DNA of 63,986 nt, counting the filler, from Reticulomyxa filosa (lineage: Eukaryota > Protista > Foraminifera), in assembly GCA_000512085.1 (NCBI GenBank). It is 27 parts of 27 records of this genome, joined end to end, with 100 filler letters (N's around TTAATTAATTAA, not from the genome) between each part and the next. Parts side by side here need not be neighbours in the genome. Positions count along the whole stretch, not along the records: positions 49,085 to 54,862 come from ASPP01022387.1; 26 more parts are not named here. One strand, 5' to 3'. A program made the translations under genes and the position numbers. Positions 49,085 to 55,600 of the stretch are shown in pieces. Under the pieces are notes generated by a model that saw only the letters and a program-made list of their open reading frames with translations, did not search any database and was not told the DNA's origin. Position 1 is the stretch's first letter. Every line of letters starts with the position of its first letter.

Positions 49085-50950
49085 CCAAGAAGAATACATA
49101 TATGAATATTGTCCCAACTTCAAGAATATCGACATTATTCAAACCAAAATACAGGTATCAATAGAGAAAGATCTAATGAAAAAAATGTTTTTAAAAAAAA
49201 AAGGGAGGTTTACGTATAGCAAGAAAGTAAGGGGTGATGATGTATTATACGTATGATTAATTTGATTTAAAAAAACAAAACATAGCGTATATGCAAGTAT
49301 TGAAGCAGAGATGGGTGTAATAGTAATGACAAGCACACCACAGCCGAATGGAGTGTGCAAATGGTTTGGACAGCCAGGAGTGCAAATAACATTTGATGCA
49401 TGTCTGGTGATAGATTGCTCCTGTACCACAATGGCGCGAGCTCCAAATTTGGCTATCAATAATACATATAGTCTCGGCAGTTCCATCTTTCCAATCTATC
49501 GCACTACAATCAAAATAAATGCAAGTCCAAATTTATCAAAGTTCAACGTTATCGTCCAAGATATTGTCGTCGATATGTGCAACTTCGTTATGTATCAACA
49601 AATTGCTATTCGCAAGTCACAAACAATCAGGACCAACATTTTTCAAATGTTGTTCAATACTTCAATGTTAGGTTCTTTTTTTTTTACTATTTTTTTTAAT
49701 AAAAGATAACCAAAAAAATTTGTATAGGACGTACAATGTGGAGCAAAAAAAAAGGGACATGGACGACAATGACAACAATGCCGACTTTGACACATGGCAC
49801 GACTGCATACAATTGTCGGTATGAAACGTCGGTGTCATTACTTGGACCAGCACCTGCCTTACGTGGTAGAAGTACTGTTGGTGCAAATGAGGATATGTGC
49901 AAAACATAATTGACTAGCAATCGAATTGCAAGTCAGTGGTGATGCAAATCCTTTTTTGTGCGGCAGGACCACTTTCCACAAGGCATGGTCTATCAAATAG
50001 CACTTATGCTATCACTTTATACTCCGGTTCACACAAACAGTTCACATATTGACCATGCTCCTGACAATATCGCAATCCATTTGTGGGAAACTTCGCTGCC
50101 ACCAAATAAACTCACAGCAATCTCCACATCAAAATGTGACCCATGTGGTCTTGTAAAGTTATTTTTACTTTGTTGTTGTAATAATAATATAAAGATGTTG
50201 TTTTGTCGTTGCTTGTATAAAATGAACAAAATGGAGCAGCGATTGCGCAAATGATTGAGTAAGTGGACTGATCGCAACAATGAAGCTTATTTCTTCAAAG
50301 TGCGATTGTGTGCAATACGAGATGAAACCGCACTTGCAAAGCATCAATATAAGGTAGTATCTGATTTTTTTAATTATGTTCATCTTGTAGATATATTGTA
50401 TCATTTACATAGGACCAGCTGTGAAAAAAAAAAGAATACGGGGTAGAAACCACCCCGCCTCCGAAAGGAGAAATAATGGTTTGGATATCTATCTTTTTTT
50501 AAAGATATGTTTAACTGTTTTGTGTTTTGTGTTGTATATTGTGTAACATAGGTTCCTCCGTCTGCAATGCTCGTTACAATTCTATTTTCCCTCCCCTTCA
50601 CACAAAAGAAAAATAGGGGTTGAATCTACACCCGTATCCTCGATGAGGAAGAATGGTTTGTTATATTTATTTATATATACATAGATATTCTTTTGTTATA
50701 ATGTTTTGTGTTTATGTGACTAAATAGGATTCCCCCACCAAAGAAAAAAACATATGTTTATTTATTTATTTGTCCCCCCTCCCTAAAAAAAATTATTGTT
50801 AGTGTCTTTATAGGAAAAAAATAATCGAAAGATTTTGTCCAAATAATAGTTATACATCTTTTTTTTTGTATGTTATTTAAAAAGATAATAAAATGTAACT
50901 TGTTTGTTTGCATATAGGTTGTCTCAACAAAATGTGACGTGCAGGTATCT
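49085..50950 (+). mobile_element. Degenerate LINE-like element 3' half: RNase H-like, zinc-knuckle remnant, structured 3' region
   Basis: RELQI (AEL.AI-like), IVVDMCNFV (I.TD-like), DNDNNADF (GNE.AD-like) and KCDPCG..FLLCC (CCHC-like). Colinear with 11758-13347. Confidence 0.6.
50434..50737 (+). repeat. Tandemly duplicated structured motif, copy B
   Basis: Unit 1 at 50434-50483 (GAATACGGGGTAGAAACCACCCCGCCTCCGAAAGGAGAAATAATGGTTTG), box TAGGTTCCTCCGTCTG at 50549-50564, unit 2 at 50611-50660, box TAGGATTCCCCC at about 50725-50736. Confidence 0.85.
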
Positions 50951-51358
50951 ATGTTGAAAAAAGTGAAAAAATTGAGAATAATGGGAGGGAAAAAAAGAGC
51001 ATGGAATAATAAAAGAAAAAAAAAGTGAAGAAAAAAAAAGGATGAAGAAAAAAATGTAGTAATAGTAAAAAAAAAAGAACCATAAAAGAAAAGGGAAAAA
51101 GAAAAATGAAAGAAAAAAAGAAAAAGAAAAAGGAAAAAAGAAAGTAAAAAAGTGATAGAAAAAAATGATGAAAAAGAAATAATAAAAAAAGAAGAAAAAA
51201 ACAAAGAAGATAATGAAAAAATTGATATTTGTAATGTTAATTTTTTATTTTTTTTAATATTTGAAAGTGGTTATCCAGCGCTGGATAACAACGTAAGTAA
51301 GTTTTTTTTTGTTTATTTAAAAAAATGTATTATGATATCATGTGATTTAATGCTATAG

Positions 51359-52690
51359 GACACAAAAGTTGGCAATGATATTACGTCGGACAAATCAACT
51401 TCAATACGCGCATTATCTAACCGCTTTTCATATGATGCTTCCAATATGAACGTACAAGATTTTCCTGTAACCACATGATAAAAAAAAATAGATCGTAACA
51501 TTTGCATGTCAAACAAAGTTGGTAATGTATGCAACTACTTGCGATTCCGGTCATTATCGACGAAATTAAAGTTCTATTACGTCCACAACTTTGTTGGTCG
51601 CGCGTGAACTGATACAAAGCTGGAAAATCTTCAAATTGGCTAGATTATACCAGCATTCTCGAGTATCGGCGTGCCCGTACAATATCGAACAAGTATTTAA
51701 AGAAAAAGATCAATCGTCGAAGTGAGTTTGGAATAAGTATGTGCTTGATTGAATATTTTTTTCTTTTTTGAATAATATCCAATTGATACTTTATTCCTGT
51801 GAAAATAGATTTGAAGCAACAAAAACATGTCTCAAGTGAAAGAATTGATATTATTAACAAGTTGTTCAGAGCATAATCGGCATAACATGTATGCATTGCA
51901 GACTCTATATTGGATAAAAAATCAAGGTTTGAATGGTGAATTGGATCATTAAAGTCTTATCCTCGGCTTGCAGATAATATTGGCGCTATTTGTGAGCCAC
52001 TCGGATCTTCTTCGACAATACACTGCATATATTCCATCATCTCCAAATTGTATTGATAGTCAACATTGAACACGTCCAGTCAACATATTAACACGGGCCA
52101 GCAAACAAGTGAATTGGAACCATGACCAGCAATCTTGGAATCGACTCCACGAATTGATCATTTGATATCCAATAAGCAACTCAAATTTGCATTTCCAATC
52201 TCAAAATATTATATATACCGCAAGCCATATCAAAAATTACAAAGACAATATGAACTAAATCTATGGACAGATGCAGCGCGATTATATCGTTGTCCGGCTT
52301 GGTGTTTTCTTGGTCTATCGCAATCACAGCTCAAAAGTGGATTGTTTGTGTAAGTGCACAAATTAGTAAATATAATACATACAGTCCAGGAAAAATAGCT
52401 TCATCAGAGTTGTGGCGAATGAAGTGCGAGCGACAAAGAAAAGTGGAAAAGTTCAAATAAATGCATATTCTGTGGAGAATTCCTTCATAGCATGCAATCC
52501 TGCTATTACCGAATTCAAGACAGGAAATGCATATCACCAACTCCAAGACAATCAAATTAATGGCATACAAAAATATCAATCGCAAAAGATAGCAGCTTTA
52601 CTCGAAGGTATATGTTATTTGTATTATATTTTCAGTTGTTGTGAAATATATTAACTAAAACAATATGAGCATGGATAATTTAATTGTAGG
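51359..52690 (+). mobile_element. Second degenerate RT-like segment in the same orientation
   Basis: LADNIGAI (YADD-like, 51967-51990), STLNTSS (LN..KT-like), NKQLKF (D.KL.F-like) and YNTY..KIASSELW..KVEKF (thumb-like). Many stops. Confidence 0.5.
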
Positions 52691-55600
52691 TTTGTAATGA
52701 AAGAAAGAGGAAGAGGATACAGAAAAAGAATATATTAAGAGAAGAAGAACAGAAAAAGAATGAAGCAAAAATGTGGACCAGTAGCATTATGGTATATGAA
52801 TTTCAATGAATCGTACAAGAAGTGTGAGCTATTGAGAGAAAGAGAGGCAAGATGATAATGTGAATAAAGAGAACGACAAAAGGAATCCATTTCACCAGTA
52901 CTTTGAGTGGTTATATATGATATGTATGAATTTACAATCATATAACAGCATTCAAATTAGCACTCGATTCGCTTCAACTCGTCAATGCGCATAATTCAAT
53001 CAAATATTGGCTGCTTCCTTTTACGTACAGTAATATAATTATGCTGTATGTGCGTGTGATATCCAATATTGATACACCAAAGATACACGAAAATATTTCC
53101 AAGGTATAATTGAGATGTCTTTCGTGCTGACTTGGTGGACAACATTACTGCAATTTAATTGATAATTGGATTTTTTTCAATGTAAAAAATCTGCTATTAT
53201 CATCAAATAAGATTGGTATGAAATGATTGGCTTGGTTGATTCGAACCCATTCGCAAGAAGGTTAAAGTTAAAAATACATTGATTATTTTTGTCTTTCTCT
53301 CTAAGCAATTTGAGTTAATTTGTTTTTGTTTTTATTTTTACAACAGCTAGAATACGTCAAGTCCAAAAGCGATACAAATGGTTGCAGTAATAACTAATGA
53401 ATGATGGATTGTATTTCCAATAGTCACTCCATCTCCTTGCCACACAAACACGAACGCGGCCAATCATTTTTTGTTGAAGCAATGTTGGTCCACTTGCCTC
53501 CATTCATACTCGAGACAAAGCGACAGACCAACATAAACAATGACAAAGTTATTAAATATAAAAAAAAAACATGGCAACGAATACTGCATCCACTCTATTT
53601 CCATTACTATGGAGTCCGTTTCGTTGCCATTGCCGTCATTGAGCATTTGAGGTGGCGTCGACGCCATAGTCTAGTCTGGAGCCACTATTATATTAATGTA
53701 TCTTCTAGCTCGTCGCTTATTGTATCGGCTACCAAAGACGCTTTCGATTGCATCATCACCAAGTTTCGATCTTATTGCAAAGTCTGCTATTGCCACACCA
53801 GCAAAAGCAAAGTAATAACATACGGCGATCTTGGAGTATATATGAACATTGCCACAATCTTTTTAAATATTATTTTTGCTTACAATTGTTCTTTTTTTAA
53901 TGTTTGAAATTGTATGCATTTTATAACACGTTGTTTTTTTTATGTTTTGTAATTCAGACAATTCAACTCATTATTGTCTTTGCCATATCTAATAAAAATT
54001 TTTGATTGTTATAAAATAGAATTATTCATTTCTCTTTCCTCTTTATTTTCAATTATCTCTTTTATCTCATTTCAGATCTGAATACATCATTATTATTTCT
54101 ATTACCAGCAAGTTTCATTGTGCAATATCCTTCTTATGGAAAAGATTGAAAAAAACTTAAAACTGGAACGAATAAGCTTGTGTTGATAAAGGGTGGCCAG
54201 AATTAAACAAAGTAATTATAGTTATTTAAAAATTAATATTCACATAAAATTGAAGCAAGATGTGTGCGAAAAAATTGTAATAAGTAATACACACGTAACA
54301 ACAAGCAGATCAGAAGGAAGTAGATTTTGTTGGGGGCAATAGCAGAAAGTTGATGAATCGATAAAAGATACTTACAAAGACCGTGCTGGCAACATGAGAT
54401 TGCTATAATGGCCACACCAAAGAGATTCAGAGCTTTGCAAAGATTTGTGGCATATGCACACCAGTTCTTGCTTTTGAATATCATGATCTAGTGATTCATT
54501 GATTTGAATTGGATATGGAGAGCCCAAAGAGGAATGCAACAGAAGGAAAAGACTGCTTATTTCTTTAAAAAACATGTCAGTATCCATGTAATTCGATTAT
54601 TCTTTCACTTTTATATCGAAAGCCACAGCATCTCTTCTAAGTTTTAACTTACGTAACAACATGAAGATAAGAAAACAAAAAAGGAACTATGCCCTTTTTA
54701 GAACACTTCAATTGATATTTTCAGAATAAAGCAAATACAATCAATTTTAAAGTAAATTATATTATCTTTTTGAAGATATTATTTTATAATAAAAATTTTG
54801 TTAACTTTTTTGCACAACTTAAATAAGTGCGAAACTTCAGTACTTCTAAAATTAAAAAAAAANNNNNNNNNNNNNNNNNNNNNNNNNNNNNNNNNNNNNN
54901 NNNNNNTTAATTAATTAANNNNNNNNNNNNNNNNNNNNNNNNNNNNNNNNNNNNNNNNNNNNCAGTATATGCCCTTTTGTTCTTGCTTGGTTTTTGTTTT
55001 TATTTTTGATAATTCTTAGATGTTATCTCTTTTTTGAAATTTGGAATATCTTAAAATTAATTATCTCCTGAATTTTCAAAGCTATGTTTTTTTTCATGAC
55101 ATCATTTGCAAGAATAATATTTTGTAAAAAATTGATCTAAAAGAGATAAAATAATTATTTAAAGCAACTATGAAGTAAAACAATTTTGGCAAATGATCAA
55201 AGAAATTCTTAAAATGATATGCTGAAATTTTTCCTTTGACTAACTCCATACATTTTGCATAATTTTTTTTCCAGATAGAAGACCAAAAATTTTGTAATAC
55301 ATTTTTATTAAATATCATCGTCAGAGCTCTTGCTAGATTAAAAGAATAAGAACAACATTAACTTTTTTGTTCCTTTTGAAGAAACATCGTAAACGTGTCG
55401 AGCTTGAGTATTTTGTTGAAAAAATCTAGTTGTTTGTTTATTATTTCGTTTAAGTAAAGGTAAATTACCGTTATTTTTACCTTTTTTTGTTAGTGTTAAA
55501 AGTTAAACTTTGGAGTGCCTGGACAACATTACATTAAAAAAAATAGATCCAATGACCACAACGCCAATACGATTTTGGCGTCGAAGGGTTTCATTTCATA

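What the first reader, a model, noticed from the sequence alone, without database searches (positions are those of the whole stretch)
50434..50737. Tandem pseudoknot + GAAA-hairpin motif conserved downstream of decayed retroelement ORFs (second copy at 12169-12475, minus strand)
Seen: two unlinked contigs each carry a duplicated ~175-nt unit with a GC-rich core, GGGGT-AG-AAACC-ACCCC-n2-3-CTCC-GAAA-GGAG-n7-GGTTT. The first unit is almost identical between copies, while the flanking ORF remnants have diverged heavily. The core can fold as an H-type pseudoknot: S1 GGGGU/ACCCC, S2 AAACC/GGUUU, with a GNRA-capped hairpin inserted in loop 3. Variants keep S1 or the hairpin: ACTCC gives a G-U wobble at 12263-12296, and the hairpin becomes TCCTC-GAT-GAGGA at 50637-50649. 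S2 is weak or lost in the second units. Inference: a selected cis-acting RNA element of this retroelement family, such as an RT-recognition signal, an exonuclease block analogous to tandem flaviviral xrRNAs, or a ribozyme. It could also be an independently transcribed ncRNA. I recognise no matching known family.
Basis: partly seen in the sequence, partly recalled or inferred. Interest (0 to 1): 0.82.

Follow-up and report, generated by a model that had tools for sequence, protein, structure and literature searches.

The report
Conserved hairpins in foraminiferal mini-exons
The tandem GC-rich hairpin motif is real and is kept in at least eight copies of a repeated gene-like family of the foraminiferan Reticulomyxa filosa, but it sits at the ends of small exon-like segments, the proposed pseudoknot strand is most simply the splice donor, and no retroelement was found.

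Summary
The motif is at the stated coordinates. Unit 1 core is 50439-50483 and unit 2 core is 50616-50660, 176-177 nt apart, and the two units align far above shuffles.

The DNA is nuclear DNA of Reticulomyxa filosa or a close relative. Seven more copies of the same locus from public assembly GCA_000512085.1 each carry both units.

Unit 1 lies in the least variable 33-nt window of about 2 kb of family alignment. Unit 2 is no better conserved than its surroundings.

No base pair shows a compensatory change among the eight copies. The 3' strand of the proposed S2 coincides with a GT that begins a 59-82 nt T-rich segment ending in ATAG|G. These splice-like signals vary in 1 of 21 columns (P about 4e-5). 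The third intron base, which S2 needs, varies without compensation.

No reverse transcriptase, integrase, LTR or TIR was found in the piece or in the 8-kb relative L008. Rfam gives nothing.

Best reading: two stem-loops 7-9 nt upstream of weak splice donors in tandemly duplicated mini-exons of a lineage-specific multi-copy family. Unit 1 is probably a selected cis-acting sequence or structure. The pseudoknot and the retroelement link are not supported. Interest is modest.

The parts
49085..49906 (+). Remnant of the upstream gene of the family (paralog of R. filosa RFI_00220), with an annotated-type intron at about 49155-49285
   Evidence: ORF 49266-49706 is 57% identical to P0001. DNA 49085-50433 is 84.6% identical to ASPP01000218.1. 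Intron boundaries were inferred from tblastn of the family proteins on their own contigs.
50354..50412 (+). Intron-like segment 0 (GT...ATAG, 59 nt)
   Evidence: GT and ATAG|G are invariant in 8 copies. Lengths are 59-65 nt in the seven copies measured.
50413..50478 (+). Mini-exon 1 (66 nt): purine/A-rich tract (A10 at 50424-50433) followed by the unit 1 core
   Evidence: Exon length is 66-74 nt across copies.
50439..50457 (+). Unit 1 stem-loop 1: CGGGGU / ACCCCG with the 7-nt loop AGAAACC
   Evidence: MFE fold. Pair counts are 93.8% paired. One G-U replacement occurs in L013 and the stem is broken in L014.
50459..50470 (+). Unit 1 stem-loop 2: CUCC-GAAA-GGAG (5 bp, UCUCC/GGAGA, in 6 of the 7 other copies; the outer pair is U-G in L010)
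   Evidence: Stem and loop are invariant in 8 of 8 copies.
50478..50483 (+).
   Evidence: GT is kept in 6 of 8 unit 1 copies (GC in L011 and L012) and in 8 of 8 unit 2 copies. The third intron base varies T/A/G/C.
50479..50551 (+). Intron-like segment 1 (73 nt, T-rich, ends CATAG)
   Evidence: The mean intron length of R. filosa is 87 nt (table in PMC13746701).
50552..50655 (+). Mini-exon 2 (104 nt): conserved ATG at 50567-50569, an A-rich tract, then the unit 2 core
50616..50649 (+). Unit 2 stem-loops: GGGU/ACCC (5 bp GGGGU/ACCCC in most other copies) and UCCUC-GAU-GAGGA
   Evidence: In this core 18 of 34 columns vary among copies, which is not above background conservation.
50656..50727 (+). 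Intron-like segment 2 (72 nt, GT...AATAG)
50728..50802 (+). Exon-like segment 3, starting GAUUCCCC, which is complementary to GGGG..AAUC of unit 2. Its 3' limit is uncertain.

Best explanation
The finding lies in nuclear DNA of Reticulomyxa filosa or a very close relative. It sits inside a member of a multi-copy repeat of at least 7 kb that looks like a lineage-specific gene cluster, not a retroelement.

The two units are tandemly duplicated mini-exons on the + strand. Each has a purine/A-rich tract and then two adjacent GC-rich stem-loops that end 7-9 nt before a weak splice donor (G|GUNUGU).

Shown:
- the organism and the family
- the tandem duplication
- conservation of the splice-like signals
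- unit 1 being a conservation peak
- absence of covariation for S2

Inferred:
- The segments are really spliced.
- Unit 1 is a selected cis-acting RNA sequence or structure in a non-coding or no-longer-coding exon. Its stems and also its loops are invariant, which points to a sequence-specific protein-binding or exon-definition element.
- It most likely helps use of the adjacent weak donor or controls the transcript.
- Unit 2 is a decaying duplicate of it.
For: Organism and family:
- Protein hit to RFI_00220.
- 84.6% DNA identity to ASPP01000218.1.
- Eleven paralogous proteins, all from R. filosa.
- Seven contigs align to 49100-51377 and carry both units.

Splice context:
- The GT and ATAG|G columns vary in 1 of 21, with binomial P of 4e-5 at the local rate of 0.464.
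- Segment lengths are 59-82 nt, against a species mean of 87 nt (PMC13746701).
- Annotated introns of the same family use GTT.. donors and CATAG or TACAG acceptors.
- NCBI gene models span the motif in L008, L010 and L014.

Conservation:
- The least variable 33-column window of 1998 columns is 50443-50475, with 5 variable columns. No permutation out of 2000 reached this.
- Distances in the block correlate with those in the flank (Spearman 0.60), so wholesale gene conversion is not indicated.

Structure:
- Both hairpins are predicted on the + strand.
- Three isolated transitions in stem 1 give G-U or U-G on the + strand and would be A-C mismatches on the - strand. They occur in L013 unit 1, L010 unit 2 and L011 unit 2.
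- Hairpin 2 is UCUCC/GGAGA in unit 1 and UCCUC/GAGGA in unit 2, which is two pair swaps.
- The covariance model finds only these 16 sites in 88 kb.
Against: - I could reach no transcript data, so splicing and even transcription are unproven.
- There are zero compensatory changes within either unit among 8 copies, so structure is not demonstrated.
- The + strand fold z-score is only -2.0, and unit 2 is not significant.
- Unit 2 is not conserved above background and is broken in L011, L013 and L014.
- The runner-up conserved island, 49167-49199, is AT-rich intron-like sequence. Conservation islands in this family are therefore not specific to the hairpins.
- A reading frame through exons 0-3 is nearly open in L008, L010 and L014, with compensating 1-nt indels. 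A coding origin therefore cannot be excluded.
- All copies were fetched through the upstream protein, so copies in other contexts would have been missed.
Confidence: 0.45

Rival explanations
1. Coding repeat. The two units are homologous coding mini-exons of a Lys-rich protein. In one frame unit 1 reads ..KKEYGVETTPSPKGEIK and unit 2 reads ..KKKIGVEIYPRILNEEKW. Nucleotide conservation would then reflect the peptide, and the hairpins would be incidental, arising from GGG-GUN and CCN codons.
For: - The same relative frame is open through exon 0 to exon 2 or 3 in L008 and L010, and in L014 apart from one nonsense change.
- 1-nt indels are compensated in L010 (+1/-1, 60 nt apart), in the piece (-1/+1), and in L008 against L013/L014.
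- The summed length of exons 1 and 2 is 184, 187, 184 and 184 in the clade L008/L010/L013/L014.
- A 3-nt indel lies at the start of exon 1.
- The A-runs would encode poly-Lys, and the frame losses I traced in L009, L012, L013 and the piece fall at A-runs, which are prone to homopolymer error.
Against: - Five of 8 copies, including this piece, have stops or shifted frames.
- Substitutions in the unit 2 core are about 24% synonymous, the neutral expectation. This is my own count from the sequences.
- Unit 1 shows 1 synonymous change among about 12.
- Hairpin 2 is kept in both units although the peptide there differs (SPKGE against ILNEE).
- The exon 2 peptide searched alone found nothing.
- The piece shows no period-3 signal.
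- An open frame in a T-poor exon is expected fairly often by composition.
Confidence: 0.22
2. An H-type pseudoknot (S1 GGGGU/ACCCC, S2 AAACC/GGUUU, with a GNRA hairpin in loop 3) acts as a cis-signal of a retroelement, such as RT recognition, an exonuclease block or a ribozyme.
For: - The topology is sterically feasible: L1 is 2 nt, there is no spacer so the helices can stack coaxially, and L3 is long (sequence).
- S2 is complementary in 6 of 8 unit 1 copies.
- Unit 1 is highly conserved.
Against: - There are no compensatory changes.
- S2 is disrupted in L011 and L012 unit 1 (GGCUU) and in unit 2 of L008, L009, L010 and L011 without compensation, with 84.6% of cells paired.
- The only strictly kept bases of its 3' strand are those of a splice donor.
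- No RT, EN, IN or gag domain and no LTR or TIR was found in the piece or in the 8-kb relative L008.
- No Rfam ribozyme or xrRNA family matches at E<=10.
Confidence: 0.07
3. No function. The block is a slowly decaying part of a segmental repeat, the conservation peak is a chance extreme or a local mutation-rate effect, and the hairpins are relics.
For: - The block is only modestly less diverged than the upstream flank: mean ungapped distance 0.159 against 0.195.
- Unit 2 is at background conservation.
- Several copies carry broken stems (L014 unit 1; L011, L013 and L014 unit 2).
- There is no covariation.
Against: - In the unit 1 core only 6 of 32 columns vary against a block rate of 0.464, and three of the six come from L014 alone.
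- GC-rich sequence in an AT-rich genome would be expected to decay faster, not slower.
- The splice-like signals are significantly conserved.
Confidence: 0.15
4. Programmed -1 ribosomal frameshift signal: an A-run slippery site (A AAA AAG), a 4-5 nt spacer, then a stem-loop or pseudoknot, present twice.
For: - The architecture fits: at least A7 followed by G, the spacer AAUA(C), then a stable stem.
- In L013 and L011 the upstream frame stops at the UAG inside stem-loop 1, and the -1 frame continues through unit 1.
Against: - In L008 and L010 no shift is needed.
- At the second A-run of L013 the shift needed to reach the GVEIYP frame is +1, not -1.
- Coding itself is not established.
Confidence: 0.03
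5. Minus-strand or DNA-level element. On the - strand the motif reads as two hairpins followed by a T-run, resembling a Pol III or intrinsic terminator or a palindromic protein-binding site.
For: - The - strand fold is stronger, at -20.4 kcal/mol with z of -3.5.
- The best Rfam near-hit is the terminator part of L20_leader on the - strand, at E of 0.2.
Against: - The genome is eukaryotic.
- The GT-AG signals and the gene models are on the + strand.
- Three of three isolated stem transitions are wobble-compatible only on the + strand.
- The Rfam score of 24 bits is far below the gathering score of 58.7.
Confidence: 0.05

Closest known systems
Exonic or boundary stem-loops that modulate use of a nearby 5' splice site (for example the tau exon 10 stem-loop and SMN2 exon 7 TSL2; from general knowledge, not tested here)
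   Same: Stable local RNA structure within about 10 nt of a weak splice donor. If S2 forms, the donor itself would be sequestered.
   Different: Those elements overlap the donor and are single-copy and vertebrate. Here there are two hairpins upstream of the donor, duplicated in tandem, in a protist multi-copy family, and splicing is not shown.
H-type pseudoknots of -1 frameshift signals and flaviviral xrRNAs
   Same: A GC-rich stem, a loop complementary to downstream sequence, an A-run upstream, and tandem arrangement.
   Different: No covariation for the second helix, no consistent frame relation, no Rfam xrRNA match, and no viral or retroelement genes.
HDV-like ribozymes at the ends of non-LTR retrotransposons
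   Same: The strand order P1-P2-P1'-hairpin-P2' resembles the outer nested pseudoknot.
   Different: No P3/L3 (zero nucleotides between AAACC and ACCCC), no Rfam HDV or CPEB3-type hit, and no retrotransposon ORF.
Lineage-specific multi-copy gene families and segmental repeats of Reticulomyxa filosa (assembly GCA_000512085.1; 30.5% repeats according to the table in PMC13746701)
   Same: The piece is a diverged member. At least nine loci share 70-85% DNA identity over 2 kb or more, and the upstream proteins RFI_00220, RFI_27526, RFI_35404 and others are homologous.
   Different: I found no description of this family or of the hairpin motif.

Membership tests
Spliceosomal mini-exon/intron array (GT-AG) | GT at the 5' end and AG at the 3' end of each intervening segment, kept among homologues | tested here: met
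   21 signal columns with 1 variable (T to C in L011/L012), P of 4e-5.
Spliceosomal mini-exon/intron array (GT-AG) | Intron length and composition typical of the species | tested here: met
   59-82 nt and T-rich. The species mean is 87 nt (PMC13746701). Annotated family introns are 55-152 nt with GTA or GTT donors and CATAG or TACAG acceptors.
Spliceosomal mini-exon/intron array (GT-AG) | Observed removal from transcripts | not testable with these tools
   No RNA-seq or EST data were available.
   0 pairs with changes on both sides. There are uncompensated breaks in 2 of 8 unit 1 copies and in several unit 2 copies, with observed values equal to shuffles.
Retroelement (LTR or non-LTR) | Reverse transcriptase, endonuclease, integrase or gag coding capacity, even if decayed | tested here: not met
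   Pfam on 20 ORFs of the piece and 10 of L008 found no such domain. No Pfam hits are on record for the called genes of the family contigs fetched.
Retroelement (LTR or non-LTR) | Terminal repeats | tested here: not met
   No direct or inverted repeats of 45 nt or more in L008, L009 or L010, apart from one low-complexity purine tract in L009.
Known RNA families (ribozymes, xrRNA, snoRNA, tRNA) | Match to a curated covariance model or tRNA detector | tested here: not met
   Rfam 15 at E<=10 gave only sub-threshold chance-level hits, the best at 24 bits against a gathering score of 58.7. ARAGORN found 0 genes.
HDV-like ribozyme | P3 helix and L3 loop between the P2 5' strand and the P1 3' strand | tested here: not met
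   AAACC is directly followed by ACCCC, with no intervening nucleotides.
-1 programmed frameshift signal | Slippery heptamer, spacer and structure, with a downstream ORF consistently in the -1 frame | tested here: inconclusive
   The architecture is present. The frame relation is 0 in L008 and L010, -1 in L011 and L013, and broken elsewhere.
Reticulomyxa filosa RFI_00220-like repeat family | DNA and protein homology to family members over the locus | tested here: met

The most novel reading that the evidence does not exclude
The motif is an RNA switch that governs splicing of tandem mini-exons. Stem-loop 1 competes with two alternative pairings of the same bases. In one, its loop (AAACC / AAAUC) pairs with the adjacent donor (G|GUUU), which masks it. 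In the other, GGGG-N4-AAYC pairs with the first eight bases of the next exon (GRUUCCCC), which bridges the intron. The second pairing co-varies between the two units, AACC:GGUU against AAUC:GAUU. A family-wide cis-regulatory switch of this kind in a foraminiferan would be a new RNA motif class.
Probability: 0.08. Interest if true: 0.6.

Novelty: new member of a known kind. Interest (0 to 1): 0.28.

Why it matters
Foraminiferal genomes are almost unexplored. A nearly invariant GC-rich hairpin pair kept across many diverged paralogs, next to weak splice donors, is a concrete candidate cis-acting RNA element there.

The striking parts of the original claim do not hold up with the data reachable here. 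These were the pseudoknot, the retroelement signal, and the ribozyme or xrRNA analogy. What remains is an uncharacterised conserved motif of unknown function in a lineage-specific repeat family. It is worth a look once transcript data are mapped, but it is not surprising to a specialist.

Tried and rejected
- **Rfam at E<=10 and ARAGORN:** nothing usable.
- **Alternative genetic codes and period-3 analysis:** no coding signal in the piece.
- **Genome-contig scan with a relaxed hairpin pattern:** found only an unrelated bacterial intergenic repeat in a Rikenellaceae MAG plus chance hits.
- **Viral-contig scan and two metagenome-contig scans:** 0 hits. The first metagenome pattern required AATGGTTTG, which later proved specific to this piece. 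The second used the family consensus.
- **The look-up of encoding contigs on two ORFs of the piece:** not on record.
- **Reading the Reticulomyxa genome paper by DOI:** not held.
- **Big representative search with the 37-aa exon 2 peptide (L008:2467-2577), searched alone by reference:** 0 hits. This is uninformative for such a short low-complexity query. No joined (spliced) model was handed to any search. Joined translations were inspected only inside scripts.
- **RNAalifold on both strands of unit 1:** no covariation, and the covariation term is slightly unfavourable.
- **Alignment of all 16 units fitted to the covariance model:** covariation exceeds shuffles. The unit 2 rows are inconsistently fitted to the model, so I give it little weight.
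- **tRNA-derived SINE idea:** the loop GGTYGAAATC resembles a B box, but there is no A box, no ARAGORN hit and no Rfam tRNA hit, so I rejected it.
- **Hammerhead idea:** CUCGAUGAGGAA in some unit 2 copies resembles the core. The core is mismatched, the other copies have AAU, and Rfam gives no hit, so I rejected it.
- **Mitochondrial GC-cluster idea:** rejected because there are no organellar genes and the spliceosomal-type signals are present.
- **Wholesale gene conversion of the block:** not indicated, because distances in block and flank correlate.
Full report
**What is in the sequence**

The piece 49085-54862 is about 33% GC and has no long ORF and no tRNA. Rfam gives nothing at or below E of 0.2, and there is no period-3 signal.

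Unit 1 has stem-loop 1 at 50439-50457 (CGGGGU, loop AGAAACC, ACCCCG). Stem-loop 2 is at 50459-50470 (CUCC-GAAA-GGAG). GGTTT follows at 50478-50482.

Unit 2 lies 176-177 nt downstream. It has GGGGT..ACACCC at 50616-50633, TCCTC-GAT-GAGGA at 50637-50649 and GGTTT at 50655-50659.

The stem pattern occurs twice against none expected. The units align over about 134 nt with score 58 against 17.6 +/- 2.9 in shuffles. By my count on that alignment, the cores are about 73% identical and the T-rich spacers about 70%.

The folds give two hairpins. Unit 1 has z of -2.0 on the + strand and -3.5 on the - strand. Unit 2 is not significant.

**Where it comes from**

ORF 49266-49706 is 57% identical to Reticulomyxa filosa hypothetical protein RFI_00220. 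DNA 49085-50433 is 84.6% identical to the end of contig ASPP01000218.1 of assembly GCA_000512085.1. That contig stops exactly at the A-run before the motif.

Profile searches returned eleven paralogous proteins, all from R. filosa and none with a Pfam domain. I fetched their contigs. Seven of them (L008-L014) align to 49100-51377 at 70-77% BLAST identity, and each carries both units.

L008, L009 and L010 share homology over 5-7 kb, so the repeat is long. It has no terminal direct or inverted repeats. It has no reverse transcriptase, integrase or gag-like domain. The only domain hit is a GNAT acetyltransferase fragment at the left end of L008. The retroelement reading therefore has no support.

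**Conservation**

I examined a family alignment of 1998 columns from 8 copies. The least variable 33-column window is 50443-50475, with 5 variable columns. The runner-up is 49167-49199, with 6 variable columns, inside an annotated-type intron of the upstream gene. No permutation out of 2000 reached these values.

In the unit 1 core 6 of 32 columns vary, three of them in L014 alone, against 46% in the surrounding 450-nt block. In the unit 2 core 18 of 34 columns vary, which is background.

Mean ungapped pairwise distance is 0.159 in the block and 0.195 upstream. The two distance sets correlate (Spearman 0.60), so the block was not simply homogenised by conversion.

The contrast is a local peak within a moderately conserved block.

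**The splice-signal reading**

Every unit is bounded by GT ... ATAG|G at the same alignment columns in all copies. The intervening T-rich segments are 59-82 nt long.

Of the 21 signal columns only one varies, T to C in the sister copies L011 and L012. The binomial P is 4e-5 at the local column-variability rate.

R. filosa introns average 87 nt (table in PMC13746701). Annotated introns of this same family use GTAAT, GTAAA, GTTCT, GTTAT and GTTGA donors and CATAG or TACAG acceptors. NCBI gene models overlap the motif in L008, L010 and L014.

The third intron base pairs with the middle A of AAACC in S2. It is T, A, G or C in different unit 2 copies and C in two unit 1 copies, never with a compensating change.

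**Tests of structure**

All measures equal their shuffles. S2 in unit 2 is paired in only 84.6% of cells, with three pairs broken. RNAalifold on either strand finds no covariation.

The positive hints are weak:
- Three isolated transitions in stem 1 give G-U or U-G on the + strand and would be mismatches on the - strand.
- Hairpin 2 is UCUCC/GGAGA in unit 1 and UCCUC/GAGGA in unit 2. Two pairs are swapped while the predicted peptide there differs.

A covariance model of the two hairpins finds exactly the 8 unit 1 sites (74-87 bits) and the 8 unit 2 sites (13-25 bits) in 88 kb, and nothing else credible. The model-fitted alignment exceeds its shuffles. It is fitted to the model and messy for unit 2, so I do not rely on it.

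The loops of unit 1 (AGAAACC and GAAA) are as invariant as the stems. This points to sequence-specific recognition rather than structure alone.

**Coding or not**

Joined in a script only, exons 0-3 give one frame that is open in L008 and L010. In L014 it is open apart from a nonsense change inside stem 1. Unit 1 reads ..KKEYGVETTPSPKGEIK and unit 2 reads ..KKKIGVEIYPRILNEEKW.

Several 1-nt indels are pairwise compensated, and the A-runs would encode poly-Lys. Against this:
- Five of 8 copies, including this piece, are out of frame.
- Substitutions in unit 2 are about 24% synonymous by my count, and in unit 1 about 1 in 12.
- T-poor exons often keep one open frame by composition.
- The exon 2 peptide, searched alone by reference, found nothing.

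I keep coding origin as the main rival.

**Other pairings**

GGGG-N4-AACC of unit 1 is complementary to the first eight bases of the next exon (GGUUCCCC). Unit 2 has GGGG-N4-AAUC against GAUUCCCC, so the difference between units is compensated. These pairs are kept in 94-100% of cells, again without within-unit covariation.

The exonic A-run can also pair with a U-run early in the following intron.

Both are post hoc observations. The first is mutually exclusive with stem-loop 1 and with S2, which is why I list a switch model as the most novel reading not excluded.

**Verdict**

Its specific content is not supported, namely the H-type pseudoknot, the retroelement signal, and the xrRNA or ribozyme analogy.

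The best explanation, at about 0.45, is a pair of stem-loops at the 3' ends of tandemly duplicated mini-exons next to weak splice donors, in a Reticulomyxa-specific multi-copy family. Unit 1 is under sequence-level constraint and unit 2 is decaying.

Transcript mapping and a whole-assembly covariance search would decide the matter.

Noticed in passing
L001:6132-6164(-), L002:2516-2548(+), L004:29-61(-): An unrelated intergenic repeat in a Rikenellaceae MAG (JAWXTQ01) occurs on three contigs downstream of ORFs. It has a GGGGTCGTTACGACCCC hairpin, then CCTCCGCAAGGAG, then a conserved roughly 70-nt tail with a second palindrome (GCATTTTTGC..GCAAAAATGC). It looks like a REP/BIME-type or terminator-associated bacterial repeat.
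   Followed up: partly
window 49150-49290: This is the second most conserved island of the family. It lies inside the annotated-type intron of the upstream gene. It is AT-rich, contains a possible 8-nt micro-exon (ATAG|CAAGAAAG|GTAAG), and is more conserved than the adjacent coding sequence at 49325-49600.
   Followed up: partly
window 50440-50451 with 50552-50559; 50616-50626 with 50728-50735: GGGG-N4-AAYC in each unit is complementary to the first 8 nt of the next exon-like segment (GRTTCCCC). The C/T difference between units is matched by G/A. This pairing is mutually exclusive with stem-loop 1.
   Followed up: partly
window 50424-50436 with 50491-50503; unit 2 CAAAAGAA (50603-50610) with TTCTTTTG (50690-50697): The exonic A-run is complementary to a U-run in the following intron-like segment. 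In L009 and L012 the G in the exonic run and the C in the intronic run both change, to A and T. This could be slippage in low-complexity sequence.
   Followed up: no
window 50960-51240: A long purine-rich low-complexity tract (AAAAG/AAAGA-type, GC about 20%) is shared by the family copies. It would encode Lys/Glu/Arg-rich sequence if translated.
   Followed up: no
L008:10-441: A GNAT acetyltransferase fragment (PF00583, E of 7e-10) sits at the left edge of the family repeat on ASPP01023863. It may mark the boundary of the repeat.
   Followed up: no
L007:3203 (contig end): The public contig ASPP01000218.1 ends exactly at the A-run preceding unit 1. Homopolymer runs seem to break this assembly, and A-run lengths in all copies may be unreliable.
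   Followed up: no
window 51400-54862: Downstream of 51377 this piece departs from most family copies. Only 52494-52712 and 52962-53338 match L008 (3337-3964), so this member is rearranged. ORF 53401-53904 (168 aa) has no Pfam hit.
   Followed up: partly
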